Below are positions 4,617 to 57,800 of a DNA stretch of 64,000 bases, piece by piece (within the stretch, counting starts at the first letter, position 1; every line of letters starts with the position of its first letter). The DNA lies in the NCBI RefSeq assembly GCF_040938485.1, contig NW_027270915.1:806001-870000 (forward strand). Direction: 5' to 3'. Under the pieces are notes generated by a model. It saw only the letters and a program-made list of their open reading frames with translations. It did no database searches and was not told the origin of the DNA. Origin of the DNA: Diadema antillarum (Eukaryota). The translations under genes and the position numbers were made by a program.

Positions 4617-4942
4617 ATGGGTTGGAAAACACCAGCCGTCATTCTCCTAGTCGCGATCCTCGTCTGGTATGGAATCTCTTGTTTATTAAACCCGAATTTG
4701 ATCAGCGAAACCCCCGATGCTGGGAGCGGATGGTGGGGTCCTGGCCCCGAAGTCCCCGGGAGCAAGCAGGACACGTCCGTACGTCCGTTCCGCCTTACCG
4801 TGTCTAATGATATTCTCTCAGATCTGAATAGGCGATTGAAGAATACACGGTTTATTGACGCCAAATATGAAACGACGTTCCGCTATGGTTCTAATCCGGC
4901 CTATATGAAGGAAGTTCAACAGTATTGGCTCAAAAAGTACAG
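4617..4942 (+). CDS. EPHX1: EPHX1-like A exon 1 (membrane anchor and EHN domain)
   Basis: MGWKTPAVILL...GWWGPG...YWLKKY; donor AG|GTAACT. Confidence 0.95.
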
Positions 4943-6560
4943 GTAACTAAGCACAAAGATTATACCAACAACGAATATAGGGTCCTAACTAACATAACGC
5001 AATTTTGCTATGATATGATTCTCTTGTAAAGATGTTCTATGAATAAAAAGCATGCCAATCTGGAATACCATTTTCTTGAAACATAAATACGAAACATAAT
5101 ATAGCCTCACTTGTGTGAGCAACATGGCTTTAAAAGAAGGAATAGAAACTATAAACAATGAATACAGGAAAACATGTTTTATTATTATTCTTTTTTAATT
5201 GACATCTCGTACAAAAGTATAGGACATATTTAGAGGAAAGTTGGTAGGTTAGCAAAAGAGATATTTGTATTTATGATTATGACCATGGTAGTGACGATGA
5301 TAATTCATTAGAATGAAATTGATAAAACCAATTATACCTCTGTATAAGGATATTAAGCACATGAATATACATGTGTATGAAAAAACTACATACAGGACCG
5401 GATAAAGAAAAATATCATTATAGGGTTTATAATAGTGTGTGTGTATACTTGCTATATGTGCATTTTGAAGACAAATTATGTAAGTAATGTTGAACATGTC
5501 TTAATGTGTTGCACTGCTTTCTGATATTTCGTCTTGTGTGTGTGTGTTGTGTGGGTGTTGGTATTTTTGTCACTCCTCAGCTGGCGAGATGCCGAGAAGA
5601 AACTAAACAAGTTTGACCACTTCCTGACCAACATCGAAGGCATTGATGTACATTTCATCCACTCCAAGCCCAAACTAGCGCCTGGACAGAAGGCTAAACC
5701 TATCATGATGATCCACGGATGGCCGAGCTCCTTCTATGATTTTAACAAGGTGATTTTTAAGTCAATTCATTTGGTGTTGAATACACGTACGATTCGTATA
5801 GGGCAATGTCTCGCACTTGACTCGATCGGTTTCCATAATCTTAGTAAGAAGAAACATTATCTACAATGTGTTATCTCTGCGAATCCAGACCTTGCAATGC
5901 TTTCAGTGTATCGGTTGAAATGTGACACACCCCTTTCGTTTAAAGGGGATCATACCATATTGCGAAATAAGGTCACAAGGATGGTTGATAAATATAGATA
6001 CAGAGTTCGCTATAATACACACATCCTAAAGTTGAATTTACATGAGATAATTAGCCATCGTTTGAGAAAGATGACAGCCCGTCGTCGAAACTATCAAATA
6101 CAACTTTTCGATGTGTCTAGAGAACTCTTTATCCACATCGTACCATAACTAGTTTTGCTTTGGCTGAGATGGAGATTCATGTTTTAACTAGAGAACTAGA
6201 AACCATAATGAAATATTAAAAAGCGTACAATTCAAACATGAATTCAAAGTATATTTGAGAGATAGCGGTTTTGTAATAGCCGAGATATCCAAAGACAAAG
6301 CAAAGCAAAATGGTCATGATCCAAAGGTGGGTCCTACCTATGGATAGCTTGACCATTTCAAAACCGATTTTCATCAAATAAACTTTGGATTCCTCGTTGA
6401 AGTGTAAGCTATTCACCTAAGTGGTTTCTATTTAGCTCACAAAAATTTAAAACCTCGATTCCCTTCTCAACCAAAACGATATGCCATTTCTTTAAACAAC
6501 GAGTCCACTAGAGACTATATCTTACGCACACACACACACAAACACACACACACATACACA

Positions 6561-6607
<47 letters not shown>

Positions 6608-8164
6608 GCTTTGTCACGTACACATTTCATAAAAATCACTGACATACGTTGCAAAATCTTCATTCTTTTTTTTGTGGGGGGGGGGGCAAACATGTCTCAA
6701 AGTTGAATAGAACCCGACAGGTGTATATTTCATGTATATTATATGATTATAGCAACTGATTGACAAAATGCCCTACATCCTGCTCGAGTAAGTACATCCA
6801 TGATTTGTTTATTATGGCTCTTGCTAAAACACTGATCAATTCTATGCTTATTTATGTCGATGTAGAGCAATTTGTCAATCAGTTGCAATGAAAACACCTC
6901 GACGGAAGAATTTCATAAATTTGAATATTATGATTACACATGTATAATCTTCTTTCATAAGCGTTGTGTGTATGTTGTCAATTACAGTTTCATGTCAAGC
7001 ATGATTATGTGAAGTTTCACGCACCTTTTGCTTTTGTACGCTATCTGCCTTGTTGAGTAAAATGGTAGAAGATATTACACAAAATAGTTTTCAAAGCTTT
7101 GATTACTTTTGCCCTTTGTTTCTTTATTAACTTAAACATTTTACAACTGTGCAAACAACCCCTAACATTTCTTTTATACTGGAACCGTCATGATATAAAA
7201 ATTGTCTGTAGTTAAAGCTTTTAATTTTTGTGTGTGCTTTGTTTCGTTTTAATGTTTGGAAATACTCAAGATCTCTATAGTGAGCAAAGATCGAGTTCAG
7301 TGAGTCTAATGACTCTATAGGTAAACATTTTGTTGTTTGTCTGGGCTAGACTCAGCGATAAGAAAATGTCAAATGTAAGATACATGCAAAATGTATGTGT
7401 ACATAATTATATACGTGGTTAAGCATGATACACTTATTGACTCGTATGAATGTTTAAACATGAAGATTTTTATTGCAAAATGAGCTATTCGTCATTTCAA
7501 AACATTGCAAAGTCGGCCCAAGTCCATTTATCAGATAGAGCAAAATTCAACCTTTCCAGTAATATCTCACATGTAGCTTAACAAGGACTATTCTAGTAAA
7601 GATTAAAAATATTCTGTATTTTCTTTGTTTATTAGCAGCTTTAATCACAAATGTCTCAACAAGGAGTTAACTCGTTTTACGATAAAACTCTTTATATATA
7701 TATATATATATATGAAGAGTTTGTTTGCAAAAACCGATAAGTCCATATTTGTCAAATAGAGATATTTGCGATTAAAGGTCAAGAAAATATTGTGGAATAC
7801 ATTGGAATGCCTTGCATGGCAATAAAGTATGTATGGCTAGCAAAGTAGAATATAGTAACGGATCATTGAAAAAAGAGAGATATCTGAGATTAAACTAGGT
7901 GAGAGACTACAAGAAGAAAATAAGAAAGTAAAGGATATCTCAATCATAACTTTAAGAATATTTATTGTCAGGCACCAAAATATTGAGCTTTCTCTGGAAA
8001 GGTTTTATTTTCGTTCTAATTTGGAGTGACTTAAGGGATCACTCGAAGATTTTGGAATGATCTCTGATGTCACTCGAAAATCAGTCATGTCAGTGAAAAT
8101 GAACATTGTTTGGAGTGATCCCTGAGGTCACTCGAATATGAGTGAAATTAAACATTTTCACTCG

Positions 8165-8195
<31 letters not shown>

Positions 8196-9519
8196 TATAT
8201 GTGTATATATATACATATATATTTATATATGTATATATATATATATATTCATATGATTTTTTATTATCTTTTTTTTTTTAGAGAGAGAGAGGGGGGGGAG
8301 AATCCACGTACTGGTGTTTACACATTTATTGTCAAGAGAACAGCAGTAAATGTTTTTCTTTTCGCCCAAAATAAAGTGAAAATGATTAATCAGCAACAAA
8401 TTTATCATCTGCTTTCCTCTTGGCAAACATGTGGATTATTATATACATATGGTTACATGATATTTCTTTTTACTCTCCATAAAATGTATGTATATAATAT
8501 TCATTTCAGTTTTTTTTCTTTTTCTTATTTCCTATATATTCACAGATTATCCCTATGTTGTCAGACCCACTCAACCACGGAGGCTCGGCTGAGGACGTAT
8601 TTGAAGTCATATGTCCCAGTATTCCAGGGTATGGTTTCTCGGAACCGCCGCATAAGCAAGGTATTTTCAATCAATTTTGAATGAAGAGATTTAAATTCTG
8701 AATAACTATTATTCCCGTTTTTTCTCTTTTTTTTGGACAAAATTGAAAAAAAGAAGAAGATAAATTTACTGCAAAAAGTGGCACTTCATGAGCTATTGCA
8801 AGCACAAATTACGAATAGTATTTGTTTGTAGATGAGATATGGGCATAAGGATTGGACATAAACTTAACTATCAAAGTGTAGTTTGTATATATTTACATGA
8901 CTCCAAATAATCTATATATAATCCATTATTATAGCAGTGAGTTTGCCTGCATGATCACATTCGTAAGATTTCTATCTTTTGGTATTGAGTCATTTCGGTT
9001 TTTTGTTTTTTGTTGGTTTGTTTCTCTGTTTGTTTTTGCTCAATCCCTTTGTCCCTCTGTTTGTAAACGTTGTGTTATCTCTTTCTGTCTATCTATACAT
9101 ACAGAAATATACACATTACGAATATCTATGCGTATTTCATATTATAATAGCTGAGTATGCTGAACGGGTTGCATGTATAATTCTACTGGGAAAAAGAACT
9201 TTGCATGTTATATGAATAGGCCTGTATACACATTCATACTATGAAACAATAGGTCTATTATGCGCACAAACATAATACATGTAGATATCTCCAGAGGTGT
9301 ATATCTTCATAATATGTACATTTTGTAAACATGACTTGTATAACGAATGTGTGATGTTTGTGAATGGCATGAATGTTTGAATAGTACTGTATATACTAAG
9401 TATTAAAGGGGATTTCGATCAAAATGATACCGTTGAACTCGTAATATTTTACTCTTATCAGACTAACTTATATTTTGACTGGATTTTTTCTTTGAACGAT
9501 GAAAACAAATCCGTGACAA

Positions 9520-9558
<39 letters not shown>

Positions 9559-12500
9559 GGATAACCAATAAGTCCAAAAACTTTATATCTGCGCAGGTCA
9601 TTCAATAATGTTCTTCTTTATATATTGATAGGATATCAGTGAAATGTGAAACATTCTTCTGCCAAGTGTTTAATATAGACCCGTGTACTGCTGTATAATT
9701 CCAAGGTTATATCAATGAAATATATCATGGTGACGAGTTGGACACTTAGGATATATGAAATATTTATACTCTGCCTCCCTCTGCTTTATTTCTGATGAAT
9801 TGCATCTTTCTTTCAATAGGTATCCATGAAATATACTATGGTGACGAGTTGGACAGCTTCTTAGAATAGATGAAATAGTTACTGTGCCTCAGACCGCCTA
9901 ATTTCTGATGAATTTTTTTTTTTTTTTGACAGGATTTACATCTGTAGATGCAGCTCGCATCTTTGACAAGTTGATGATGCGTCTTGGGTTCAAGGAGTAT
10001 TATCTCCAGGGAGGCGACATGGGAATGATGATTGGTATCAACATGGCCGTTATGTTTCCTAGGTAACTAATTTTACACGGTTTCTGAATTTTTTCTCTTT
10101 TTTCTCCGTTTTGCCTTCGTGGTCACATGTCATATCCCAGAGAGCCAAGATTAACATTTGCTTGATTACCCATCATCGAAGTGACGTTACTTTATTGCAA
10201 TCATCTATTTATCATTTTATCACTACACAAAAAGTATGACATGGCATTTCAATGAAGTTATAATATTCCATATTGAGGTAGACCAGTTCTACAGTTATCA
10301 AAGGTCAGGGGTCGTCTTTCTAAGACAGCTGTAAATGTTTTTCGATATGTGATATTGATTTTACTTACTTTTCCTTAAATATTTTGCAAAACTGTTGGAA
10401 ATTTTCTAGTGACCATGCTATGAGTATACTGGATCAAGCGTTAGGGAGAAACTTTGTAGATAAGCAGCTTCAGTAGTGAAGCATGCGATTGAGTGGGATA
10501 TGAAGTCGTTGAAAACGTTATGGAGACACAAATTGCCTCCCAAAGGTCGTGCGTCTCCATAATAAAGTAATCATACATACATACAGTATAGGGCCTGTAT
10601 ATAATTATGTATATTGATTGCAGCATGGTCAGAGTTAAGGTTAACAGGTTAAAGGTCATATACAAGGTCATTCATACATACAGATACGTGTATCCATACC
10701 GTATTGAATATCAAAGTAAATCAAGAAGCTCGATTTTTCTGTAAAGATCATCACAAATGTTACGTGATTCACGCCCTCTGTGTCATATTTACAGCCATGT
10801 CAAAGGTCTCCATAACAACGATGTCCTCCAGGTGAGTGGGATGGCGTTGGTCTACCCATTTGTAGCCAATATCTGGCCGTCTTTCTTCCTCCCCGACGAG
10901 AGGGAGCAGAAGGCCTTACTTCCTCCGGGAGAACGCCTCCTCTTCGTCCTTGAGGAGTCCGGCGTCTTCTACCAGCATGCAACAAAACCGGACTCCGTCG
11001 GTGAGTCCTCTTCACTTTCAAGCCTTAATGACGAGGTTCCGTGACGTCAAATGACGCGTTGTTTGAGGAGCAAAACTAACACTTGTGTAGGGCCTATCAA
11101 GCGCATTGCTCATTACATAGCGCGCGATACGCGTATACCGCATACCACCGGATACCCACCTGCCTATCATAAACGTGAGATTGAACGCTTTCATACGCGC
11201 TTGCCCTCGCGCATGGCTTGATGACGTCATTGGAATCTCGTCTTTTAAACCATGTGACCGTCCTGTAGCCAAAGATAATCCTGGAACAGTGAATTAAAAA
11301 AAAAAAATCAGCAGTAACACCACTGGAGATAGATCAGGGGGGTGTTTCATCAACGAGTTCGTCGGAGGTTTTCACCGACAAATTTGAAAAGCTACTGAAA
11401 TCCTTGCGTCTGATTGGCTGATTGCAAATTTGTCGGTGAAAACCTCCGACGAACTCGTTGATGAAACGCCCCCCAGAGGTTATCACTTATTGCTGGTTTC
11501 ATTCCTGTGAGTTTATTCCTCATTCCCTACAGCTGCGGCTCTCCAAGATTCTCCCATGGGGCTGGCGTCGTACATCCTGGAAAAATATTCCGGATGGTCC
11601 AACAGAAATTGGCGGGACCTGCCCGATGGCGGACTGACCAAGGAATGGACACTGGACGAACTCTTGACCAATGTGATGATCTACTGGGTCAACAACAGTA
11701 TTGGAAATACGCTGCGAATGTTGAAAGAGGACGTGTTACAATTCAGTAGTAACTACATAAATACGTAAGTATTCTGTTTCCTGTCTATTCTTAGATGGCT
11801 AGGAGTATCAAAATATATGTGATCAGAATAATTGAAGAGCTTGCAACCAAAAGGCGCTAAATCCATTGAAAAATGATGGATATAGCGCCTTTTGGAAGCA
11901 AGCTCTTTCCAACCATGTAAAGGAGAAATGCAGATTATCGTTTGGGGGAATTTGGATAATAGCATGAAGATATTCAGAAAAAATGCAAATATTGCCCTTT
12001 TTGAAAAGTATGCATTGATATGCAGAACCGAAGCGAGAAGAGCACAAAATGCATCTTACACCATTAAATTCTGTATGCTTATGAGAAAATAAAGTACAAA
12101 AGATGTTTGTTTATCCGAAAATCAAACAAGCTTCGTTATTCTAAAGGTTCGTTCTATTCGAGAATTACAAATTCCCTGATATAGCCTACGACATGTGCGT
12201 TAAGCCGAAAACAAAAGATTGTTTGTTTAGTATTTGTGGCGTCATTCCGAAGGTTCGTTATTTTGAAGTTTATCAAATAGAAAATAAAATAAGTCTCGTA
12301 TATCCACCAACGAATCTTCGGAATTACGAACCCTATTTCATTTTCGGATTAACGAATCGTCGTATGAACGGACGTTATTTCATTTTCGGGTTAATAAATC
12401 GACGGAATAATGAACCTCATTTCATTTTAGGCTTAACAAACCTTTGGAATAACGAACCGTCGGAACATCGAACTGTATTAACAGGCGGTTTAATACAGTT

Positions 12501-13126
12501 CGATATTCCGACGGTACGTTATTCCAAAGATTTGTTAGTGGGCCCACATCCTTGATTGACAACACCTTCTAGCAAATCACACATAGTCAATATATCATAT
12601 AATTTGTCTTATGTTTTTGTTTTGTTTTGTTTTGTTTTGTTATGTTTCTTTTTTTGTTGGTTTTCTGTCCATGTCTACACTTTGTACCTTAAAAATCAAT
12701 TATTTTGTGAATACTCGTACATAAGGGGGCTTACTTTACAAGGCATTTTTTGGCTTTATTCGAGTTCTCTTTTTTTTTTCATTTTCACAGATATTTATGC
12801 AAAATGATTGATTATCTTTTTGTTCTGTATCGTAAAATTCAATACAGTTGTATTGTTTTATCAGAAAATGAGATGTATAAACCAATGAATTGAATTGAAT
12901 TATGACTTGGCCATCCCGTCACAGGCATTCCACTAGCGTTCCATACGGGCATACCGTTGCGCCCGAGGACTTCCTCGGGTCGGCTGAATGGCTGATGAAG
13001 CCGTTCCACCCTGGACTCATTCATTTCACCTACCTGCCCAAAGGGGGCCACTTTCCCGCCTTCCAGGTGCCCGAGCTGCTGGCGAAGGATGTGCGGGAGT
13101 TCGTTCGGAAGGTGGAAGCCCTCTAG
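4617..13126 (+). CDS. EPHX1: Microsomal epoxide hydrolase-like paralog A (7 coding exons, 459 aa), non-canonical active site
   Basis: Exons 4617-4942, 5581-5749, 8546-8660, 9933-10062, 10795-11000, 11533-11764 and 12925-13126 sum to 1380 nt, all GT-AG and in frame. Shows an N-terminal TM anchor, GWWGPG, HGWP, SIPGYGFS, QGGD, TKPD and GGHF. Confidence 0.95.
5581..5749 (+). CDS. EPHX1: EPHX1-like A exon 2
   Basis: WRDAEKKLNKFDHFLTNIEGIDVHFIH...HGWPSSFYDFNK; 169 nt. Confidence 0.95.
8546..8660 (+). CDS. EPHX1: EPHX1-like A exon 3
   Basis: IIPMLSDPLNHGGSAEDVFEVICPSIPGYGFSEPPHKQ; 115 nt. Confidence 0.95.
9706..9932 (+). repeat. Tandem duplication (114 + 113 bp) of the 3' end of intron 3 of A
   Basis: Both units contain atgaaatat...atggtgacgagttggaca...atttctgatgaatt, then a pyrimidine tract and AG. 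Confidence 0.8.
9933..10062 (+). CDS. EPHX1: EPHX1-like A exon 4 (nucleophile Asp codon 10016-10018)
   Basis: FTSVDAARIFDKLMMRLGFKEYYLQGGDMGMMIGINMAVMFP; 130 nt. Confidence 0.95.
10795..11000 (+). CDS. EPHX1: EPHX1-like A exon 5
   Basis: HVKGLHNNDVLQ...EESGVFYQHATKPDSV; 206 nt. Confidence 0.95.
11337..11474. mobile_element. Palindromic MITE (50-bp arms, 38-bp spacer) in intron 5 of A
   Basis: ggggggtgtttcatcaacgagttcgtcggaggttttcaccgacaaatttg is mirrored at 11425-11474 with one mismatch. Confidence 0.75.
11533..11764 (+). CDS. EPHX1: EPHX1-like A exon 6
   Basis: ALQDSPMGLASYILEKYSGW...LLTNVMIYWVNNSIGNTLRMLKED; 232 nt. Confidence 0.95.
12433..12537. repeat. Near-perfect hairpin formed by two facing transposon-like ends, preceded by ~50-bp subrepeats (about 12310-12470)
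   Basis: ...ggaataacgaaccgtcggaacatcgaactgtattaa / caggcggt / ttaatacagttcgatattccgacggtacgttattcc... Confidence 0.7.
12925..13126 (+). CDS. EPHX1: EPHX1-like A exon 7 (acid Asp 12968-12970, His 13049-13051, stop TAG)
   Basis: HSTSVPYGHTVAPEDFLGSAEW...KGGHFPAFQVPELLAKDVREFVRKVEAL*; 202 nt. Confidence 0.95.
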
Positions 13127-42000: not shown

Positions 42001-44594
42001 ACAATATCCTATCACTATTTATAACTTTTCCACCATCTTCACTATCATCATTCAAGCTGTCTGGATCTGATAGGCACAGTCATAAGGCTGAGTGGCTCTT
42101 CCACTGCTTCTGATTTGGTGCCAGCTGTAGCTTCAATCTGATTGGACAGAAGTTGGTATCCCTGAGCAATAGACCACACCTTGTTTGTGGGGGGCTTCAG
42201 AGAAACCGTATCCAGGGATGCTTGGGCAGATAACCTCAAAGATGTCATCAGCCGTCCCACCATGGCTCAGGGGGTCCGTCAGCATAGGTAGAATCTGAAA
42301 AACAAAAAGGAAGTAGGGATGTAGGTATGATAACTCAGGGCAGTCAACATCTGCAGTGAAAAAAGTAAAAGGGAAAAATACTGATGTGCAGGGTAAAGAA
42401 ATTTGGAAGGCAAAAGTCATATCTTTGACAAAAATGGGATGGTTGCACAAAATGTGTACTGTATGTCAAATCAAATGTCAGAAAATAAAGAACATTATTG
42501 TTAATTAACAAATCATCAAAACATACATCACAAATGCTGATATCCAGCCTTGAATGCAATCCATTCACAAGAAAACAATACATTACTCACAATTCAAACA
42601 CATTTCACGGATAATGTAAAACTATACAGATACATTCGGGGCATGAAACCTTTATGAAATGGAGCCAACGGCCTTTTTCGCGATAGGAAACTTTTGCAAA
42701 TTGCCACTGCCATTCAATGCATATTGGGCGCAGAGAAACACTTTTGTGTGCATTTTGTGAATCTTGGCTCCTTGCAAAATTTGCGGAAGTTTCATGCCCA
42801 CCAAAATTTCTGGTTTTTCAATATTGTATGCATATACTTCATATTACTCCCAAAGGCAACAATGTGAGCTAATGAAAGTGGACGGTTAAGTAGGATACTT
42901 TGTGGGTATGTATGTGGCCTTTTCAGGGCCACATATGTAAACCCAAGAAAGAAAATGCGGTGCACCGTTAAGCCTTCTACCACCAATGTTCAACTGCCAC
43001 GGAAGCCTTCAAAGATTTTACCTTGTAGAACTCGTAGACTGATCCAGGCCAGCCATGGACAATGATGAGGGGTTTAGCCTTCTGTCCAGGCTTCAGTTTA
43101 GGCTTCACATGGAGGAAGTGTACATCGATGCCCTCTATGTTGGTCAAGAACTGGTCATACTGATTTAACGTTCTCTCAGCATCTCGCCAGCTAAGGGAAG
43201 AGTCAAAAATAAGAATCAAAAATTCAAAAATGTTTAGTGAATTTACATGAAAGACTTTCTTAACCTGATGAAGATTCTTATCTGTTTCAACATATCACAA
43301 AATGATTAATCCCTAGTATAAAAAGAACTAAGTATAAGGTGTGCACATCTAAAAAACAAACATACAACTAAAATCAATAGATGTATTGTAATTGTATGTT
43401 ACACTTGAAAATCATTGAGTCGTTGACACTGCACCATCCCGCAGGCAGAACTTCTGACATTTATTCTGCAACAAGACAGAATGCTAGTGCTGGCACAGAA
43501 CCTTTTCAGTGGATGTGAGAGGAGTATTTGTTAGGTTGCTTGTTTTGTTTTACATTTCTTTAGATGGTATCACAACTGAAATACTCTATCAACTGGCAGA
43601 CAACATCATAATGGCATGCACATCATGTTCTTTGCTTGTTTTGATGGGATGCTGGATAATTGATTTTCAAAATGTCATTAGAACCACTGAGAAGTTGTAT
43701 TAAAATTGCCATATGTAGGTCCTAATTCAATAGCATCAACAATCTGTTTTCAATATCATTATTATAAAGCAAAAGTGTATATAATTTTAACATGCATCTC
43801 TGTATTTCACTTGTTAGATGAATTATCAAAATTACTTATATTACTATGGTAGGGTTAGGATTCTTCATTCACATTATATATTCATATTATCAACAAGTCC
43901 TCATATTTTTGTTCTCAGACCCATAAACAATTCAAGCTTGATGAGAAGCACCTTAAAGAAAACAAGCAAAGTTTCATCCACACTCTTTCATGTGTGTGTG
44001 CAAGTGCATTTTTTTTCTTTCATTTTAAAGATTTACCTGAGCCTGAGCATGAGGGGATGTTCTTATCTTATATCTGACTTCTTATTGTCATTAGGTAATC
44101 AACAGCACAGCATTGTCAGGGGCCATGGATCAGACTTTGAAGTGAGAATGGGACCATGTGAAAGGAATTGTTATTAATGTTAAAAGGTTTGCTCCCCACC
44201 TAGCTATAGCAGATCGTCTGGACTCTGGGGAATGGGCCACGCCCACCGACCACAATGCTTCTCACCTGTATTTCTCGAGCCAATATCTCTGCACCTGCTT
44301 CATGAAGTCTGAATTGAAGCCATAATGGAAGGCCGAGTCCTCAAGCCGATCGACAAATCGTGTTTTTTCCAGTCGCTCCTTCAGATCTGCCAATACTTCA
44401 TCAGACACGTTGATACGAAACGGACGAACGGACGTGTCTTGTTCCTTCCCCGCCACTTCGGGCAGACCACGACCCCACCACCCGCTGCCAACATCGGGGG
44501 GTTCAGTGAGCAGGCTTGGAAAGAGCACAAATGAAATCAAATAGCCGCACACGACCGCCAGGATTAAAATGACAATAGGTGTTTTCCAGCCCAT
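35916..44594 (-). CDS. EPHX1: Microsomal epoxide hydrolase paralog C (7 coding exons, 460 aa), canonical active site
   Basis: Exons 44266-44594, 43022-43190, 42180-42294, 40465-40594, 39198-39403, 37579-37810 and 35916-36117 sum to 1383 nt. Shows HGWPGS, GGDWG, ETGYMHIQATKPD, SSMRLYKE and GGHFAAFEEP. Confidence 0.96.
36816..36900. mobile_element. piggyBac-type 85-bp MITE in intron 6 of C
   Basis: TTAA|CCCGTTGAGGA ... TCCTCAATGGG|TTAA. Confidence 0.8.
37579..37810 (-). CDS. EPHX1: EPHX1-like C exon 6 (second Tyr codon 37620-37622)
   Basis: QGVTDSPVGLAAYIMEKFSTW...IASSMRLYKEEIG; 232 nt. Confidence 0.95.
38845..39140. repeat. ~300-bp (ATT/ATC)n microsatellite in intron 5 of C
   Basis: Visible trinucleotide run; it produces the spurious poly-Ile ORFs. 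Confidence 0.95.
39198..39403 (-). CDS. EPHX1: EPHX1-like C exon 5 (first Tyr codon 39232-39234)
   Basis: NVKGIHTNMAV...QETGYMHIQATKPDTV; 206 nt. Confidence 0.95.
39448..39615. mobile_element. Tigger-like MITE remnant in intron 4 of C
   Basis: tacagtgtactcctgttataac ... gctataatgggagttcattgta imperfect inverted ends with TA flanks. Confidence 0.45.
40465..40594 (-). CDS. EPHX1: EPHX1-like C exon 4
   Basis: FTVSQAARVFHKLMTRLGFEKYYVQGGDWGAAITYNMALIFP; 130 nt. Confidence 0.95.
40937..41300 (-). mobile_element. Full-length tRNA-derived SINE with a (CAA)n tail, in intron 3 of C
   Basis: The minus strand reads GGGCGGTGAGTTGGCTCAGTCGGTAGCGCG (A box) ... GGGTTCGAACCCG (B box), then a ~250-bp body and a (CAA)n tail. 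Confidence 0.85.
42180..42294 (-). CDS. EPHX1: EPHX1-like C exon 3
   Basis: ILPMLTDPLSHGGTADDIFEVICPSIPGYGFSEAPHKQ; 115 nt. Confidence 0.95.
43022..43190 (-). CDS. EPHX1: EPHX1-like C exon 2
   Basis: WRDAERTLNQYDQF...HGWPGSVYEFYK; 169 nt. Confidence 0.95.
44266..44594 (-). CDS. EPHX1: EPHX1-like C exon 1
   Basis: MGWKTPIVIL...LEDSAFHYGFNSDFM...YWLEKY; 329 nt. Confidence 0.95.
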
Positions 44595-48618: not shown

Positions 48619-48820
48619 TTAAAGTGCTTCCACCTTTCTAACGAACTGTCGGATGTCATCCGCTAGGAGGCGTGGCTCTTCAAAGGCAGCAAAATGCCCC
48701 CCACGGGGCATGATGGTGTAACTGATGAGGTTGGGGTTGGCCTCCTTCAAGGCCCACTCGGCTGCATGGGTGAGGTCGTGAGGAAAATCAGCGTAGGCGT
48801 ATGGGACCATGTTTGCATAG
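48619..48820 (-). CDS. EPHX1: EPHX1-like D exon 7
   Basis: YANMVPYAYADFPHDLTH...RGGHFAAFEEPRLLADDIRQFVRKVEAL*; 202 nt. Confidence 0.95.
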
Positions 48821-51800
48821 CTACAGAGAAAGAGACAGATGACAAATTGGATGAATTATTTGTGTATTTTACACTCCCACTTATAAAGGGCATAGACAGC
48901 TGGTTTTGGGAGTGCTCCCGAATAATTCTGAATTCTTAGAAAAACAGAAGACAATCTGGCCCTGGAATGCTCTAAAGTTTAATCTTGAACAGGCCTGCTT
49001 TTTGTCTTTGCTAAATTGGGGGGGGGGGGGGGAGGGGGGAGGGGGGAGGGAGGGCTGGGCTGATTCTCTTTTTCCCCTTGTTTTTTGCAATGGAAATTGT
49101 CACTTATCACTTTTCTACCATAATTAACATAAAATCAATCAATCAATCAATCAAACTGATGGATATTATACATAGTCAGGTTTTTATGAGTTTCATGACA
49201 GCTAGAGCACTGTTTTTTATAGGAAATATGTTCACTAAATCACAAAATGCAAAGGGGATACAGTGTACATGTATCGCTTGACCGCTTTTGTACAGGTGGA
49301 TCAGCAGCCTGTCTGTTCTCTGCCAATGGCTTAATCTCGCTGCGGGAGGGGGGGGGGGGGGAGTTTCATAAGTTCATCAGAGAATTTAGGTAGGAAAGGG
49401 TGAAGCTAAATGCCTCGGAACATAATGGTTCAAGTAAAGCTGACAACAGGTGGTGAAAAAGACCCCAAAAGTGGTAGACCACAGCCAACATACCACGTGA
49501 ACTTCCACTATTCAAAACAAAGCACTCACCTATATTCATATTTCTCTGAGGATCCCCCCAGTTCTTCTTTGTAAAGACGCATGGACGATGCAATGTTCCC
49601 ATTGACCCAGTAGATCATCACATTGGTCAAGAGCTCATCCAGCGTCCAGATCTTGGTCAGTCCACCGTCCGGCAGGTCTCGCCACTCTTTGTTGGTCCAA
49701 GTTGAGAACTTTTCCATGATGTATGCGGCAAGTCCGACGGGAGAGTCATTCACACCTTGCCCTAAACATCAACATGATCAAATGACTTCATTTTGGAAAC
49801 CGTTTCTCTCAAAGTCAACTCACAAAGATGTAGTTTATTTTTACACTGAAAGATAAATTAACTATGCAACTGTGATGACAATACAGTGAAATCAAATCGT
49901 AAATACCAATCTTTTGTAATTTGACCATGTATCACAACAAATACATGTGCAAGAAGTCGTAATTTTACCCTATTTCATGTAAGCACTCAAAATCAGTGAA
50001 ATGGCTCAACCTAGAACTTTTTTTCTTTTTTTTTTAAATGATAATTTCTGAAAGACCAGCTCTGCCTTTATACAATTGTTAATTTTGGGATCCCTGTTAG
50101 AATGAGTGTGAAATTGATAATTTTTTCCCCTTTTCTTCAACACTGAGAAACAGAAAAAAGCTAAAGGAACAAAAAAGCGGAATCAGCATATATGAGGATC
50201 TTACTGACACAAATCGTGCACTTCTCTGGGATGCCTTCGCTGAAATGAAAAGACCAAATACAAAGGTCCTGTCAGCTTGGACCATTGATGGCAGGATCAT
50301 CATTTCCATGAGGGCATCAAATGGGAAAACAATCACAAAAAGAATCTACAGCAAGATTGACTTGCAAAAGCTCTGAAGATCCACCAACATATGAAGTGAT
50401 TAATAGATTATTGATTCTATGTAAACTGGGTTCTGCTGATTGATTTCATATGTCTGACAACATAAAGGATCCGAACTTCAATACTACCACTCATATCTCA
50501 CAAGTTTAGTGTCTAATGAAATAATTGAAAGGTGTTTTCTCCTGGTGTTTCTTTGCTCTTGATTACAATTAAAATACGATCTAGGTTTATGCAATCTTAA
50601 TTTTTGCATTGTTTTTCCTTTGTTTTTCCCTCAACTTGCCAATAGTGTGATAGTTATTTCAACCACTCTGTAGTTATGTCTGTGTGTATTTTCGTTAATG
50701 TCAATATCTGTGCCTCTCAGGTAAAACGTGTGTCGGCTTTGAAGTTTTTAGGATTAATACTTGATGAAAATGTTACCTGGAATGCTCATGTAAATTACCT
50801 TTGTAATGTGTTGAATATTGGTGCTATGTATTTAAAGTCAATACCTAAAGTGTTTTTAAAAATGATTTATAATTCAATTTACCACATTTGTCATACGGGA
50901 TCATAATTTGGGGCAATGCATCAAAAATCCAGTTGAACAGAGTTTGTGTCTTACAAAAACGTGCAATACGTATTGTACACCATGTTTCATATCTTGCCCA
51001 TTCAAAATCAATCTTTCATTTGTATAAGATGCTGCAATTTTGTGATATTTATCTTTTACAGTTGGGTATTTTTATGTATTTTTGTTACAAAAAGTTCCTT
51101 CCAGAATCCCTTTTAGACACACTCTTCACATTCAACTCTAATATGTTTTGGAAGGATCATACTATTCCATGTAAAGGTGCCACAGTATTAATCATAACTA
51201 GTATTTACTTAATGCATGCAAAATTTCAGATTAATGCAATGATCACAGCAGTATAACCTTCCATTCCACATCCCTTCATTGCATAGAGCAGCACTGGGTA
51301 AGATAACACCTTTCTATCTGGTATAGGTACTTTACATTATCTATGAGTTTGGAAAGTCAATTTATATTATGCTTTATGTAATCCTAAAGCTCAAAGTGTG
51401 CTCTTTCAGAATTTGCCCTTCAGCGAAAATCCACGTCTGGCAACTTCTAGATCCAAGATGGTTTTGAGATGCAGGGTCACACATTTAACCTGCTATCAAA
51501 GGATGAGCTGCTTTTGCTACATAACATGCATTTCCCTTAGACACCTGCCCACATATACTAAGGACTAGCCTTCAACAGGCTAATAATATTCCAGTGCTCT
51601 TCACTGACCAGCAGTGTCCGGCTTGGTGGCCTGGATGTGCATGTATCCGCTCTCTTGGAGGGCAAAGAAGAATAGTGAACTGAATGGAAGAAACCGGTCC
51701 TGATCCTCTTTCTTTGGCATTAGCAGAGACGGGCAGAACCCAGCAACAATGGGATAAATGAGGCCCTTAAAGTTGGACAGAGTCGCCATGTTGTTGTGGA

Positions 51801-54800
51801 CACCTTTAACATGGCTGAGAAATGCGAGGCAACAAAAGAGAGACAACTATCAAAAAGCAAGAAGAATGATGATCATCAAAGGTGAGAAGTGAGACCTCAA
51901 GTGAGATAGTCATATATATAAAAAAAATTACTAAAACTTAGAGCATATTATATACCATTTGCAGATGAAACAAACACCCGGCTTTACTGCTTCAAAAAAG
52001 TTCTAAAAGGAGAGTTATATGGATAGGAAAAAAAAACAATGTAAAAATCTTAATCAGTATAATCAGTAAGTATTATTGAATATACAAATGTAAACAATAT
52101 AATAATTATAATAAAATTGTTTCTAGAATAAACCATCTCCAGTTGATGACTTATCAATAATAATGTTATCTCCTAAATAATTGAGGCATAATTGCAGAAT
52201 TTTTATATGGTAGGAGGTTTTGTGATACAACTGACCTACATAAGTACATCAAATGCGATAACTTGGACAATTTCTAAATCACTGCTCCAAATGATAAACA
52301 ATAAAGTCTGTCAACACAGTACCAATATCAATTACTTGAAGATCATTGGGGATACATACTCAGGGAACATGATGGCCATATTTCGAGTGATAAGACTTCC
52401 CCAGTCGCCCCCTTGGACGTAGTACTTCTTAAACCCAAGACGACCCATCAGTTTGTGGAAGACTCTTCCCGCTTTGGATGCAGAGAAACCTGGGTTGGTT
52501 TGAGGAGAATGAGAAGACCAAATCAGCACTGCATTGCTCTTTTATCTACAGGGTCGTAGATGAAACATACCTATAAATATGATCCATGTTTAACCACATA
52601 TGATGACATACGACTTTCCAGGGTTATGTTTCCTTAAATATGTAAGCATCCATTCTCCATACCCCTGTAGGAAAAAAACCAACAATAACATACAAGCTCA
52701 CCATTCAATAAAACTAGTAACTTTTACAAGTAATGGTAAAACTTTGTAATCAGTGGTAAATATTAACAATTTCTTGGCTTTGTTATGCTATGCCTTATGG
52801 GTGTGGCTATGGAAGTTACACTTGATCGTAAAGTTACCAGAGTTTTATGTGATGGTCCCATGGTCATTCCCTATTCCATGTGCACTTTTGACATGGAAGC
52901 ACTTTCTCAAAACTCAAAACAGAGAACCACAACTTATACACAATGTCCTGTCTCTCCTTCACTTGATATTAAAGTGAACTCACCTATTTTTTTTTTAATG
53001 CAATTTGGTAAATCTGAAGTGACATACAGCAAAAATTCAAAATTGAAAGCATTTACGTTTTGATACAAAAGTCCTCTGATAAACCAGCTGAAAGACATGA
53101 AATATTGCCATAATTACATTCAATGAATAAAAATCCCAAGATTTCAATTTCCTTATTAACACTCAATTTTTGAACGAATATAGTATTGCTTGGAGAAACT
53201 TATGAAATTACTAGTGAGAACCTGATCCAATTTGAATCTCTCTGTGCAAATTATACAAACTGGCTAACTTCCTGATTGGACAGAAGTTGGTATCCCTGAG
53301 CAACAGACCACACCTTGTTTGTGGGGGGCTTCTGAGAAGCCATATCCTGGGATACTTGGGCAGATAACCTCAAAGATGTCATCAGCCGTCCCACCATGGC
53401 TAAGGGGGTCCGTCAGCATTGGTAGCATCTGAAAAATACAACCATTCATTCCATGTTTGCAATTCAATGTGAAGCATGAAATCAAGTCAAATCAAACATG
53501 TAATCTAGCTACCCATTTTACTTGACACAGGTCTCTTTAAAATTAACATCATATCTGCAGCAGCCTCTTGGTTTTATGGTACAGAAAGATTGCAGAAAAT
53601 AAAATTCCACTACTTCTAGGTTCAAGATCCAGTGGTTTCCTGAAAAATAAAAATGTGATAAAAAGTGTATAATTTGACTGTGATGACCTCCTAACACATG
53701 TGCCTAGAAAAGGGATATGACTGCATACATGTGTGCAAATCGGTTCTGTAAATGTAGCCTCTTTCTGAGACTCCACAAGTAAAAATCATGCTTAATGTGC
53801 CTACGTTTTTTTTTTTTTTTAATATCAGACAATGTGTTATATTGTTTACTGTGTGTATTTGCCACTATGGTGTCACATTTTAATGAAGATAATGGCCTGA
53901 AAATAAGTTCCATGTGTATTGTTCTATATGCAATATTTGCTATTACATGAGTATGGGATTACTTATTTTTGTTATGATTTGTGAACAGAAATGACAGAAA
54001 AAGCAACAAATAAGACAATAAAGAAACAAGCACACAAAAACTCAAACAAACAAACAAACAAACAAAAAACAAACAAACTATCAAACAAAACACCTGCCCA
54101 ACTGCCAATGTAACATGGTACTGTGGAGCTAGGGACTGGTCTATCAATGATTATGATAATATTACTGGTATCAGATTTGATTTTGATTTGATTTGATTTT
54201 ATACATAATAATATTTTATACATAATAATCATACATATAAATGGATATGTACATGAACATTAGTTGCTAACAAAATGAGGTTTTTTTCATTACTTTTAGA
54301 ATATACAGCAATACATTTCTTCATTTGCCTGTACAATGTCCAACAGAACAGTGATGCAATGAATAACGCAGAAGGGCTACAGCTTAAGCATTGCTCGATT
54401 TGCATGCAGCCCTCGTACATAATACATAACATATAGGAAAATAGGGGGAGGGATGACTTGCATAGAGATAGGATAGGAGAAAGGAGAGAGGAGAGGTCTG
54501 TCTGCTTTCACTAATACACAAAGTTAGATCACCTGGATCACTGAATAGTAAAGCATGGCAAAGTAATTTCTCACCGAGGTACAGGTGAACAGTTACAGGT
54601 CATGGTCGGTTACATAACATTATGCAACAAGGAAATGTAGAAATTACGCGGTGCGTAATATATGTCCCCGCCGGAAGTAGCATTTAGTAGCAAAATGTAC
54701 AATATAGGTAAAAAGATCAAGGTCAAAGGTCAAAGAAGTCAAAGGTCAAAATTCTATGTAGAAGTTTTGAAGCCCTCACCTAGTGCCATCATTTAAAGCA

Positions 54801-57800
54801 AACGGAATCGAAATCGGGTTAGAAATGGCGAAGGAGTAGCATTTTGTAGCCAATGTACAATAAAGGTAAAAAATCAAGATCAAAGGTCAAAGAAGTCAAA
54901 GGTCAAAATTCTGTGTAGAAGTTTTGAAGCCCTCACCTAGTGCCATCACATAAAGGAAACGGAATCGAAATCGGGTTAGAAATGGCAAAGGAGTAGCATT
55001 TGGTAGCAAAATGTACAATACAGGTCAAAATCAAGGTCAGAGGTCAAAGAAGTCAAAGGTCAAAATTCTGTGTAGAAGTTTTGAAGCCCTCACCTAGTGC
55101 CATCACTTAAAGCAAACGGAATTGAAATCGGGTTACAAATGACGAAGGAGTAGCATTTTGTAGCAAAATGTACAATATAGGTAAAAAATCAAGGTCAAAG
55201 GTCAAAGAAGTCAAAGGTCAAAATTCTGTGTAGAAGTTTTGAAGCCCTCACCTAGTGCCATCACATAGAGCAAACGGAATCGAAATCGGGTTAGAAATGG
55301 CGAAGGAGTAGCATTTTGTAGGCAATGTACAATACAGGTCAAAAATCAAGGTCAAAGGTCAAAGAAGTCAAAGGTCAAAATTCTGTGTAGAAGTTTTGAA
55401 GCCCTCACCTAGTGCCATCATATAAAGCAAACGGAATCAAAATTGGGTTGGAAATGGCGAAGGAGTAGCATTTTGAAGCAAAATGTACAATATAGGTCAA
55501 AGGTCAAGGTCAAAGGTCACAACTGAAATTCTGTATAGAAGTTTCACAGCTCCCATGTAGTGCTATCATATAAAGCAAACAGAATCAAAATCGGGTTAGA
55601 AATGGCGAAGGAGTAGCATTTTGAACATTTTGATCACACACGGACGCACGGACAGACGGACAGACGGACAGACGGACAGACGGACACACACACGTACGGA
55701 GCCTGTTTCATAGTCCCCTGCTCGAACTCGTTCGGCGGGGACAATAAATTCAGACCAACGATAATTCCATGAGGGAATTTCATACACAATACAATTGCAC
55801 TGACATTTTAAGATCACTGATATCCAGAGAGCAGCATTGTCTTTACAGCTTTCTTGAAAGAATACATAGACTTTAAAGTTCGAATTTCTGAAGGAAGAGA
55901 GTTCCAAATATCAGGTCCAGTGTGTCTGATAGATTTCAGAGCCATCACCGTTTTTAGGATTTTGTAGATGAAATTTATCAGATTGCCTTGTGGGATAAGA
56001 ATGTATATCCTTGTTTAAATGAAATAATGAGAAAAAAGAAGATGGCAACTGACCGTTACACAAACGAAACATAAAAAGTGAATTTTGCAAAAAATTAATA
56101 TCATTTACCTTTAGTGTTTTTAATTCTACGAACAAAGGATCTGAATGGTCCCGATAACCTGAATTGGTGCATATACGTATAGCTTTCTTTTGTAGAAGCA
56201 ATATACTGTCAATGTGACATCTTTCCCCATCGCTTATTCAAGCAAACATGAGACCGAGTTTGCTTTTCACTCCACTTTATGTACGGTACATAATAGCCTT
56301 GTAGCTGGAGGAATCATGCTATAGGTTTTCATAGGATATAATGTGCCGACCCCCCCCCCCCCAAAAAAAAAAAAAAAAAAAAAATGCAAAAGATAAGCAT
56401 CTGTGGGTTAAGCAATTAATGGCAGCAATTGCAACTGGAATCTCAATGGGGACCAACTGGAACCAGTAAACACCCATTGAATTCAATGGGAACCAATTAA
56501 AACCAATTGAGACCAATTGAATTTTCAATTGGGATTCAACTGGATTTTCGTCCTGGGTTAACTTTTATGAAATGACTAACTCATGAATGCACTTCTTGTG
56601 TTGATGGATTACACCCTTAACGATAAGAGTTTGTGGTAGACCTGCTGGTACATGGCTGTACTTTGCTGCCTTAGAGAGGGAACAGTGTTTGTGCAAACAT
56701 TAGGAAGATATGGTGTCTGTCTAGACGAAATGTTCTATCTGCAATCACCAACTCATGACGGACCTGAACAACATCCTTTCCGTTTTGACCTGGTAAAGGT
56801 CACAAAGTGCATGGACGTGCTCCTTTGTTTGGTACATATCATCCCTGTTCTCACTCTAACTCAGAAGATTTAAAGACAGGGGCCACGGAACAGGCAGGGG
56901 AGAAGGCTGCAGCCCCCAGTCCCACTTTTTTTTTTTTTTTTTGCTAAAAAAAGAAAAACAAACAAACGATTAAACAAAGCACACAAAACAAAACAAAAAT
57001 ATAAAGAAAGAAAACAGATCACAAAACCCATGAATTTCCAAAGGTTCCATGCACAGATCCTTCCTGTCCCCTCCTCCCAAGGAAGGTAACTTTGACCTCG
57101 GTTTTCCCCTTTTCTCCAGTCATCCCCACCCCCCTTCCCCCCGAGGAAAACAAAAAACAAAACTAAGCAACCCCCCCCCCCAAAAAAAAAAACCCTGAAA
57201 GGGAAAGTCTACATCTGGATGTTATGTTGCTGCTGTGTAAACATAGAGATATCTGATAAGTTCATCAGTGAAAAGTTAGGAAGGAAACCTAATGCATGAA
57301 AAAAAAATTATGAACTGTGAAATTTGATAGAGTAAATTGGTGAAGTATTTAGATACGGGTATCCTGTAAATACCATATTTTTTTCTCCTCAATTTGGGTT
57401 ACTGTCTCACGAGGAAATCTTGCAAAAACATCTGCATGCTGAAGGGCTTTCAACCATTAACTGTATAATAACATGGATACCTTGTAGAACTCGTAGACTG
57501 ATCCAGGCCAGCCATGGACAATGATGAGGGGTTTAGCCTTCTGTCCAGGCTTTAGTTTAGGCTTCACATGGAGGAAGTGTACATCAATGCCCTCTATGTT
57601 GGTCAAGAACTGGTCATACTGATTTAGCGTTTTCTCAGCATCCCGCCAGCTATGACATAAAGTAAGAAATGACAAAAAAGAAAAGAAAAGAAAAATACAA
57701 GAGTGACATTTGAAAGATAGATGTAGAGCTCTTATATATTTTCCACTTTCTTTAGAATCTTGAAAAATTAGTCCCAAACACTCTACAACTTGATTCCTTG

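What the first reader, a model, noticed from the sequence alone, without database searches (positions are those of the whole stretch)
10795..11764. Paralogs A and B have lost both epoxide-activating tyrosines but keep the catalytic triad: a candidate new hydrolase class derived from mEH
Seen: at the position of human Tyr299 (ESGYMHIQ), C and D have GYMHIQ, while A has GVFYQH (Val, 10964-10966) and B has GFLYQH (Phe, 26405-26407). At the position of human Tyr374 (RFYKE), C and D have RLYKE, while A has RMLKE (11721-11723) and B has RMFKE (27569-27571). Both genes have seven intact exons, the nucleophile Asp, the His in GGHF and the acid. Established: these two cap-domain tyrosines polarise and protonate the epoxide oxygen in alpha/beta-fold epoxide hydrolases, and removing them cripples the chemistry. 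Inference: loss of both in two otherwise well-conserved genes fits a change of reaction (ester, amide or carbon-halogen hydrolysis through an Asp-ester intermediate) better than decay. The new Tyr two residues along (YQH) might partly substitute.
Basis: partly seen in the sequence, partly recalled or inferred. Interest (0 to 1): 0.88.

Follow-up and report, generated by a model that had tools for sequence, protein, structure and literature searches.

The report
Tyrosine-less epoxide hydrolase paralogs in Diadema
Two intact sea-urchin copies of microsomal epoxide hydrolase, kept by selection, lack both tyrosines that normally activate the epoxide but keep the catalytic core; they are the end point of an old, stepwise rebuilding of the active site in an urchin-specific gene lineage, and what they do is untested.

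Summary
The window is from Diadema antillarum and holds four seven-exon EPHX1-like genes: A and B on the + strand, C and D on the - strand. My models equal RefSeq proteins exactly.

- **Tyrosines lost.** At human Tyr299, A has Val and B has Phe. At Tyr374, A has Leu and B has Phe.
- **Core kept.** HGWP, the Asp nucleophile, the His and the acid are all present.
- **Rarity.** Of 311 full-length animal relatives, only the four Diadema A/B proteins lack both tyrosines.
- **No decay.** D. setosum has the same four-gene array with the same substitutions. Ortholog dN/dS is 0.135 for A and 0.085 for B, against 0.084 for C and 0.051 for D.
- **New: the lineage is old.** A/B group (100/99 support) with full-length S. 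purpuratus and L. variegatus proteins. Those proteins already have Tyr374Phe, His301Tyr, Asp-Val/Met-Gly and an Asp after beta6, but keep Tyr299.
- **New: the loss was stepwise.** The 'YQH' tyrosine predates the loss of Tyr299. It lies at i+2 in a modelled helix, so it probably does not fill the old position. The Diadema-specific His at i+4 shares the face of the lost tyrosine.

Whether A/B are compensated epoxide hydrolases or have a new chemistry cannot be settled here. 'New hydrolase class' is not shown. I rate it a new variant of a known kind, of moderate interest.

The parts
4617..13126 (+). Gene A (type-2 EPHX1-like, 459 aa). Exons 4617-4942, 5581-5749, 8546-8660, 9933-10062, 10795-11000, 11533-11764, 12925-13126.
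   Evidence: Splice model. Translation is identical to RefSeq P0340 (XP_071478189.1 / XP_071501224.1). Pfam EHN on exons 1-2.
20352..29042 (+). Gene B (type-2 EPHX1-like, 459 aa). Exons 20352-20677, 21747-21915, 23411-23525, 24204-24333, 26236-26441, 27381-27612, 28841-29042. The N runs 23080-23223 and 26526-27028 lie in introns 2 and 5.
   Evidence: Translation is identical to P0134 (XP_071478180.1).
35916..44594 (-). Gene C (canonical type-1 EPHX1-like, 460 aa) with Tyr305 and Tyr380; the internal control.
   Evidence: Identical to P0344. Tyr codons TAC at 39234-39232 and 37622-37620.
48619..59164 (-). Gene D (canonical type-1 EPHX1-like, 460 aa) with Tyr305 and Tyr380.
   Evidence: Identical to P0345. 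Tyr codons at 51645-51643 and 49573-49571.
10964..10978 (+). A codons 304-308, V-F-Y-Q-H. Val304 is at the human Tyr299 position, Tyr306 at His301 and His308 at Gln303.
   Evidence: codons; alignment to 4QLA; family columns; inside helix 291-310 of the model.
11721..11723 (+). A Leu379 (TTG) at the human Tyr374 position, in R-M-L-K-E.
10016..10021 (+). A nucleophile Asp232 followed by Met233. The family has Trp at this position in 303 of 311 proteins.
10820..10822 (+). A Asp256 just after strand beta6. The family mostly has Met, Phe or Leu here. Asp is shared by every type-2 urchin protein.
12968..13051 (+). A charge-relay acid Asp408 (12968-12970) and catalytic His435 (13049-13051), both kept.
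26405..26419 (+). B codons 304-308, F-L-Y-Q-H. Phe304 is at the Tyr299 position.
27569..27571 (+). B Phe379 (TTC) at the Tyr374 position, in R-M-F-K-E.
24287..24292 (+). B nucleophile Asp232 followed by Trp233 (the canonical D-W).

Best explanation
A and B are working, selectively maintained, ER-anchored members of a fast-evolving, urchin-specific paralog clade of microsomal epoxide hydrolase, here called 'type 2'.

The machinery for covalent catalysis is kept: the HGWP oxyanion-hole motif, nucleophile Asp232, His435 and Asp408. The cap elements that activate the leaving group were rebuilt in steps:
- Before the Diadema/camarodont split: Tyr374 to Phe, His301 to Tyr, Met to Asp after beta6. 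Trp after the nucleophile became Met or Val in most members.
- In the Diadema line: Tyr299 to Phe (B), then to Val (A), Phe374 to Leu (A), and residue 303 to His.

My best guess for how they work (inferred, not shown): Asp232 still attacks an electrophilic carbon, and His435/Asp408 still hydrolyse the enzyme-bound ester. The substrate is most probably still an epoxide or a similarly activated electrophile. Its oxygen would be handled by a non-canonical donor set: His308 on the face of the lost Tyr, with Tyr306 and/or Asp256. This is analogous in principle to the His/Tyr pair of Cif-type epoxide hydrolases. The substrate range would differ from that of the canonical neighbours C and D.
For: - **Shown, intact genes:** the models equal RefSeq proteins.
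- **Shown, conserved array:** D. setosum has the same four-gene array in the same order and orientation.
- **Shown, purifying selection:** NG86 dN/dS between the two Diadema species is A 0.135, B 0.085, C 0.084, D 0.051 at dS 0.21-0.29. The ML codon-model omega is 0.161 for the A/B subtree and 0.139 for C/D.
- **Shown, residues fixed:** all key residues are identical in D. setosum.
- **Shown, old clade:** the type-2 clade has 100/100 support, and 100/99 after removing the trait's own columns. Full-length S. purpuratus P0348 and L. variegatus P0349 keep Asp, His, the acid and HGWP, and carry G-Y-M-Y, R-L-F-K-E, D-V/M-G and N-N-D.
- **Shown, targeted change:** of 101 columns at least 90% conserved in 299 other family members, A/B keep 90. 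The 11 changes are enriched in the cap (8 of 11; Fisher one-sided p = 0.03), five of them in residues 304-316. C/D changed 1.
- **Shown, fold kept:** the AlphaFold2 model of A has pLDDT 92.4, and its best PDB match is Bombyx JHEH 4QLA at TM 0.86/0.93. Residues 304-308 are helical in the models of both A and C.
- **Literature:** epoxide hydrolases with a non-Tyr donor exist (Cif His177/Tyr239; PMC12918957, PMC8244358). A single Tyr-to-Phe change in sEH leaves about 10% activity (PMC6331936).
Against: - No coordinates were available, so no distance from His308, Tyr306 or Asp256 to Asp232 could be measured. The donor assignment rests only on helix periodicity.
- In characterised alpha/beta epoxide hydrolases, removing both tyrosines abolishes activity (my own knowledge of the EchA and sEH double mutants; not retrieved here).
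- His at position 303 also occurs in family members that keep Tyr299 (P0239, P0313). There is therefore no general link between His303 and loss of Tyr299.
- A also lost the Trp next to the nucleophile, and several changes sit near the acid and the His (Phe405, Glu440). That fits a deeper change of chemistry as well as it fits compensation.
- No expression data were examined.
Confidence: 0.4

Rival explanations
1. One reading: A/B, and perhaps the whole type-2 clade, have changed reaction class. The Asp nucleophile and the His/acid pair now hydrolyse a substrate whose leaving group needs no tyrosine. Candidates are a carbon-halogen bond (dehalogenase-like) or an ester or amide via an anhydride-type intermediate.
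For: - Both ring-opening tyrosines are gone while the triad and oxyanion motif stay under purifying selection.
- The rebuilding is old and coordinated: Tyr374Phe, His301Tyr, Met256Asp, Glu440Gln and Trp233 to Met or Val are shared across urchins.
- Mammalian mEH already shows an esterase activity on 2-arachidonoylglycerol (PMC7792612, citing Nithipatikom 2014).
- After the mEH-type structures, the next fold matches are fluoroacetate dehalogenases, which use the same Asp/His chemistry.
Against: - The fluoroacetate dehalogenase matches are weak (TM 0.41-0.49, 14-17% identity) and reflect the shared superfamily fold.
- A lacks the Trp after the nucleophile that haloalkane dehalogenases use to hold the halide.
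- Camarodont type-2 proteins still keep Tyr299 in all three species seen. This suggests epoxide chemistry persisted long after the clade arose.
- No halide-binding or acyl-pocket signature could be tested.
Confidence: 0.3
2. A/B are non-catalytic or nearly so. They would be membrane-bound binding, sequestering or regulatory proteins (pseudoenzymes), for instance partners of C/D, that keep the fold and pocket but no longer turn over substrate.
For: - Loss of both tyrosines is expected to cripple epoxide chemistry.
- The family does produce apparent pseudoenzymes: P0143 and P0168 have Asn in place of the nucleophile Asp.
- Purifying selection alone does not prove catalysis.
Against: - Unlike those cases, every type-2 protein keeps the nucleophile Asp, the His, the acid and HGWP across a clade that includes both Diadema and camarodont urchins.
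- This holds despite branches about twice as long as in type 1. A pure binder has no need to keep all of them.
Confidence: 0.15
3. A/B are duplicates in early decay. The tyrosine losses would be neutral damage in redundant copies.
For: - Type-2 branches are long: about 0.5 substitutions per site from the urchin node, against about 0.25 for type 1.
- A has a somewhat higher dN/dS than B, C and D.
Against: - There are no stops, frameshifts or broken splice sites in A or B in either Diadema species.
- dN/dS is 0.085-0.135.
- 90 of 101 family-conserved columns are kept.
- The lineage survives with full-length genes in S. purpuratus and L. variegatus.
Confidence: 0.03

Closest known systems
Microsomal epoxide hydrolase / juvenile hormone epoxide hydrolase (EPHX1, JHEH; Pfam EHN + Abhydrolase_1; solved example Bombyx mori JHEH, PDB 4QLA)
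   Same: - Homologous over the full length, 42-46% identical to vertebrate and arthropod members.
- N-terminal hydrophobic anchor helix, EHN domain, HGWP, G-G-D-x-G nucleophile elbow, G-G-H-F histidine and an acid before it.
- The model superposes on 4QLA at TM 0.86/0.93, rmsd 2.0 A.
- Same exon structure as the canonical neighbours C and D.
   Different: - Both ring-opening tyrosines are replaced (Val/Phe and Leu/Phe).
- The near-invariant H-I-Q after the first Tyr reads Y-Q-H.
- There is an Asp after beta6.
- Glu440 is Gln.
- A has Met instead of Trp after the nucleophile.
Echinoid 'type-2' EPHX1 paralogs: S. purpuratus XP_030844990.1 (P0348), L. variegatus XP_041457947.1 (P0349), L. pictus XP_063953777.1 (P0236)
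   Same: - Same clade, with 100/99 to 100/100 support.
- Shared derived states: Tyr374Phe, His301Tyr, Asp after beta6, Thr314Ser, Gly316Ala, Ala328Ser, G-G-H-F-P-A-F-Q-V-P, and Met or Val after the nucleophile (as in A).
   Different: They still have Tyr299 (G-Y-M-Y) and Phe at position 303. Diadema A/B have Val or Phe at 299 and His at 303.
Cif-type epoxide hydrolases (P. aeruginosa Cif, Burkholderia Cfl1/Cfl2)
   Same: They are a precedent that an alpha/beta epoxide hydrolase can work without the canonical Tyr/Tyr pair, using His177/Tyr239 as the ring-opening pair (PMC12918957, PMC8244358). A/B offer a His and a Tyr on the first cap helix.
   Different: - Cif belongs to the sEH-like branch, not the mEH branch, and has no EHN domain.
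- In Cif the His sits at the first-Tyr position and the second Tyr is kept.
- In A/B the first position is Val or Phe, the second Tyr is lost, and the candidate His and Tyr are two to four residues downstream. This is an analogy only.
Haloalkane and fluoroacetate dehalogenases (alpha/beta fold, Asp nucleophile)
   Same: Asp nucleophile, His/acid hydrolysis of an alkyl-enzyme ester, and no need for tyrosine proton donors. Fluoroacetate dehalogenase chains are the first matches outside the mEH-type structures in the fold search.
   Different: The similarity is at superfamily level only (TM 0.41-0.49, 14-17% identity). A lacks the halide-stabilising Trp after the nucleophile. No second halide-stabilising residue was identified.

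Membership tests
Microsomal epoxide hydrolase family (EPHX1/JHEH), by descent and architecture | N-terminal EHN domain (Pfam PF06441) followed by an alpha/beta-hydrolase domain | tested here: met
   Exons 1 and 2 of A hit EHN at 33.8 and 65.4 bits (cut-off 22.8). Exons 3 and 4 give weak Abhydrolase_1 hits. The database lists PF06441 + PF00561 for B's protein.
Microsomal epoxide hydrolase family (EPHX1/JHEH), by descent and architecture | mEH-type fold with cap domain | tested here: met
   The AlphaFold2 model of A has pLDDT 92.4. Its best PDB match is 4QLA at TM 0.86/0.93, followed by Streptomyces and Aspergillus mEH-type structures.
Microsomal epoxide hydrolase family (EPHX1/JHEH), by descent and architecture | Single N-terminal membrane anchor | tested here: inconclusive
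   Residues 4-24 are hydrophobic and modelled as one helix. No dedicated topology predictor was run.
Microsomal epoxide hydrolase family (EPHX1/JHEH), by descent and architecture | Groups inside the animal EPHX1/JHEH tree | tested here: met
   A/B sit inside the echinoid EPHX1 clade in the ML trees.
Alpha/beta-fold epoxide hydrolase, as a catalytic class | HGXP oxyanion-hole motif | tested here: met
   H154-G-W156-P in A and B.
Alpha/beta-fold epoxide hydrolase, as a catalytic class | Asp nucleophile with His and an acidic partner | tested here: met
   Asp232, His435 and Asp408 are present in A and B and in both D. setosum orthologs.
Alpha/beta-fold epoxide hydrolase, as a catalytic class | Two cap tyrosines that polarise and protonate the epoxide oxygen (human Tyr299, Tyr374; PMC8331186) | tested here: not met
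   A has Val304/Leu379 and B has Phe304/Phe379, aligned against 4QLA and 311 family members.
Alpha/beta-fold epoxide hydrolase, as a catalytic class | Epoxide hydrolysis activity | not testable with these tools
   Needs an enzyme assay.
Cif-like epoxide hydrolases (His/Tyr ring-opening pair) | His at the first-Tyr position with the second Tyr retained | tested here: not met
   The first position is Val or Phe and the second is Leu or Phe. The His is at +4 and the Tyr at +2 from the first position.
Haloalkane dehalogenases | Halide-stabilising Trp directly after the nucleophile, plus a second Trp or Asn | tested here: inconclusive
   B has Asp-Trp and A has Asp-Met. A second halide-binding residue cannot be assigned without coordinates. 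Similarity is at fold level only.

The most novel reading that the evidence does not exclude
The urchin type-2 lineage, with Diadema A/B as its end point, is a natural case of an mEH scaffold that has left epoxide chemistry. It would use the retained Asp/His/acid machinery for a different bond, such as carbon-halogen bonds of algal metabolites or an ester. The camarodont genes, with one Tyr left, would be living intermediates of that transition.
Probability: 0.3. Interest if true: 0.8.

Novelty: new variant of a known kind. Interest (0 to 1): 0.55.

Why it matters
The two cap tyrosines are treated as a defining catalytic feature of alpha/beta-fold epoxide hydrolases. They are Tyr in 304 of the 311 animal mEH-family proteins sampled here.

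This lineage lost them one after the other, yet kept the nucleophile, the histidine, the acid and the oxyanion motif under purifying selection. It therefore offers a graded natural series for study:
- type-1 C/D with both tyrosines
- camarodont type 2 with one tyrosine
- Diadema B with Phe/Phe
- Diadema A with Val/Leu and Asp-Met

The series lets one ask how this scaffold tolerates or compensates for the loss, or how it moves to a new reaction. All four Diadema genes sit in one 55-kb array, so matched controls come for free. The result would bear on function prediction for the many 'epoxide hydrolase 1-like' annotations and on engineering of mEH-type biocatalysts.

Tried and rejected
- **Whole-library HMMER search with A's exon 5 alone.** It returned nine hits, all fragments or repeats.
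- **Exon rows aligned to a poor scaffold (A1) or to a mammal-like template (A2).** MAFFT misplaced the fragments, so I did not search with either alignment.
- **What worked.** I first searched with P0008 (a Gryllus protein fragment returned by that exon search) to obtain full-length templates. I then searched a cleaner alignment, A3, and then B's own protein.
- **Link between His at position 303 and loss of Tyr299.** Only one independent case supports it (Glandiceps P0246, G-H-F-H-I-H). Other proteins have His303 together with Tyr299. I do not use it as evidence.
- **Geometric test of the YQH tyrosine.** The structure tool returns no coordinates. Only secondary structure and helix periodicity could be used.
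- **dN/dS on the type-2 stem.** Not attempted. At about 59% protein identity between types, synonymous sites would be saturated, and no branch-model software was available.
- **Literature.** Searches found nothing on urchin mEH paralogs, and nothing in the open-access library for the Aspergillus Tyr251/Tyr314 papers.
- **L. pictus type-2 gene.** Canonical exon 1 was not found within the fetched locus, which extends 10 kb upstream of the annotated start. I left this unresolved because the L. variegatus and S. purpuratus orthologs are full length.
Full report
**What is in the window**

Stop-to-stop ORFs carrying mEH motifs, tblastn of the copies against each other, and splice-junction matching resolve four genes:
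- A on the + strand, 4617-13126
- B on the + strand, 20352-29042
- C on the - strand, 44594-35916
- D on the - strand, 59164-48619

Each has seven coding exons with GT-AG introns. Exon lengths are the same in all four: 326 nt (A/B) or 329 nt (C/D), then 169, 115, 130, 206, 232 and 202 nt. There are no internal stops. The finding's range, 10795-11764, is exon 5, intron 5 and exon 6 of A. Exons 1-2 match Pfam EHN, the epoxide hydrolase N-terminus. A and B are 87% identical, C and D 83.5%, and A/B against C/D about 59%.

**Observation check**

| Position (human numbering) | A | B | C and D |
|---|---|---|---|
| Tyr299 | Val304, GTC 10964-10966 | Phe304, TTC 26405-26407 | TAC (Tyr) |
| Tyr374 | Leu379, TTG 11721-11723 | Phe379, TTC 27569-27571 | TAC (Tyr) |

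HMMER alignments of A's exons 5 and 6 to the solved Bombyx JHEH 4QLA place Val and Leu opposite the tyrosines of G-Y-M-H-I-Q and R-L-Y. Human EPHX1 uses Asp226/Glu404/His431 plus Tyr299 and Tyr374 (PMC8331186). A and B keep HGWP, Asp232, Asp408 and His435. In 311 full-length animal family members, each tyrosine column is Tyr in 304. Six other proteins lack one tyrosine. Only the four Diadema A/B proteins lack both.

**Source and gene models**

Database searches identify the genome as Diadema antillarum. My spliced models are identical to RefSeq proteins: A = P0340, B = P0134, C = P0344, D = P0345. I reached these through a detour, because exon-sized queries cannot find full-length proteins.

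**Selection**

Diadema setosum carries the same four genes in the same order and orientation on OZ188197.1. I extracted its coding sequences exon by exon, and they translate exactly to its RefSeq proteins.

| Gene | NG86 dN/dS between species |
|---|---|
| A | 0.135 |
| B | 0.085 |
| C | 0.084 |
| D | 0.051 |

Synonymous divergence (dS) is 0.21-0.29. A Goldman-Yang codon model gives omega 0.161 for the A/B subtree and 0.139 for C/D. The replacement residues are the same in D. setosum: A has Val, Leu and Asp-Met; B has Phe, Phe and Asp-Trp. Decay is excluded.

In ML trees, A/B group with S. purpuratus and Lytechinus proteins at 100/100 support. Support is still 100/99 when full-length sequences are used and the trait's own columns are removed. 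The full-length S. purpuratus XP_030844990.1 and L. variegatus XP_041457947.1 keep the nucleophile, the His, the acid and HGWP. They read G-Y-M-Y-(V/D)-F, R-L-F-K-E, D-(V/M)-G and N-N-D.

An urchin 'type-2' paralog therefore arose before Diadema and camarodonts split. It already had Tyr374Phe, His301Tyr and Asp after beta6, but it kept Tyr299. Diadema then replaced Tyr299 and acquired His at position 303, where camarodonts have Phe and the family has Gln.

Codons fit a path of single steps, with A the more derived copy:
- Position 299: TAC (Tyr) to TTC (Phe, B) to GTC (Val, A).
- Position 374: TAC (Tyr) to TTC (Phe, B and camarodonts) to TTG (Leu, A).

Type-2 paths from the urchin node are about twice as long as type-1 paths.

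**Pattern of change**

Of 101 columns at least 90% conserved in 299 other family members, all four A/B proteins differ at 11. C/D differ at 1. The 11 changes are:
- Leu83Lys
- Tyr304Val/Phe
- His306Tyr
- Gln308His
- Thr314Ser
- Gly316Ala
- Ala328Ser
- Ser375Thr
- Tyr379Leu/Phe
- Phe405Ala/Thr
- Glu440Gln

Eight lie in the cap region, residues 255-399 (one-sided Fisher p = 0.03). Five lie within residues 304-316. The core is preserved, and the leaving-group-activating region is rebuilt.

**Structure**

The AlphaFold2 models are confident: A has pLDDT 92.4 and C has 93.2. A's best solved match is 4QLA (TM 0.86/0.93, rmsd 2.0 A), followed by Streptomyces and Aspergillus mEH-type enzymes. Fluoroacetate dehalogenases follow far behind at TM 0.41-0.49.

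The segment 304-308 is helical in both models. By helix periodicity, which is inference, the YQH tyrosine at i+2 points roughly opposite to residue 304. His308 at i+4 shares the face of the lost tyrosine. No coordinates are returned, so no distances could be measured.

**Interpretation**

Shown:
- A/B are intact, conserved, constrained members of the mEH family by descent.
- They fail one defining catalytic feature of epoxide hydrolases.

Inferred:
- The triad and oxyanion motif are kept throughout a clade that spans Diadema and camarodont urchins, so covalent Asp catalysis most likely persists.

Open:
- Either the substrate is still an epoxide handled by relocated donors (His308, Tyr306, Asp256), or the chemistry has changed.
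- Cif's His/Tyr pair is a precedent for non-canonical donors (PMC12918957, PMC8244358).
- The persistence of Tyr299 in camarodont type-2 genes, and the roughly 10% residual activity of single Tyr-to-Phe sEH mutants (PMC6331936), tilt me slightly to the first option.
- The breadth of the remodelling and mEH's known esterase side activity (PMC7792612) keep the second option alive.

My odds are compensated or specialised epoxide hydrolase 0.4, new reaction class 0.3, pseudoenzyme 0.15 and decay 0.03.

**Verdict**

This is a new variant of a known kind: a naturally tyrosine-less, selectively maintained mEH lineage with living intermediates. Interest is moderate to good, and the answer depends on enzyme assays.

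Noticed in passing
window 11334-11477 (intron 5 of A, inside the finding's range): A 56-nt inverted repeat, 95% complementary, with a 32-nt spacer. It looks like a small hairpin-forming (MITE-like) insertion and has no bearing on the coding sequence.
   Followed up: partly
L001/L002 (D. setosum B and A), exons 2-3: In D. setosum, A and B differ by only 3/169 and 7/115 nt in exons 2 and 3. That is less than each differs from its D. antillarum ortholog (9-10), which suggests gene conversion between the two paralogs there. Exons 4-6, which hold the key residues, behave as clean orthologs. This also explains why the protein tree pulls A of D. setosum towards B.
   Followed up: partly
outside the window, same D. 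antillarum contig (P0347) and the other contig (P0346): RefSeq lists further D-like proteins in D. antillarum. P0347 has 27 differences from D and lies on the same 2.66-Mb contig. P0346 is 464 aa and lies on the 4.25-Mb contig. The array may therefore hold a fifth copy beyond the window, and the two contigs may be haplotypes.
   Followed up: no
P0246 (Glandiceps talaboti, hemichordate): An independent EPHX1-like paralog reads G-H-F-H-I-H, with His at the Tyr299 position and His at position 303, and the second Tyr kept. This is a Cif-like His/Tyr arrangement inside the mEH branch.
   Followed up: no
P0143 (Agrilus planipennis) and P0168 (transcript assembly): These family members have Asn instead of the nucleophile Asp. 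P0143 also has Asn for the catalytic His. They are likely pseudoenzymes and contrast usefully with the intact triad of the urchin type-2 clade.
   Followed up: no
window 12968-12970, 28884-28886, 36074-36072, 48777-48775: All four Diadema genes have Asp rather than Glu at the charge-relay acid (human Glu404). Asp is the minority state in the family, 47 of 311. PMC8331186 notes that the Glu404Asp variant was proposed to raise mEH activity.
   Followed up: partly
window 10820-10822 and 26261-26263: The Asp after strand beta6 (N-N-D) is shared by all type-2 urchin proteins. It also occurs in two otherwise canonical gecko EPHX1 proteins (P0249, P0253), so on its own it does not mark a change of mechanism.
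   Followed up: partly
L005 (Lytechinus pictus type-2 locus): Exons 2-7 are intact. The annotated first exon is unrelated to the canonical exon 1, and no canonical exon 1 lies within the fetched locus, which extends 10 kb upstream of the annotated start. This is either an alternative 5' end or an annotation gap.
   Followed up: partly
window 23080-23223 and 26526-27028: The two N runs fall in introns 2 and 5 of B and touch no exon. They were left as they are.
   Followed up: yes
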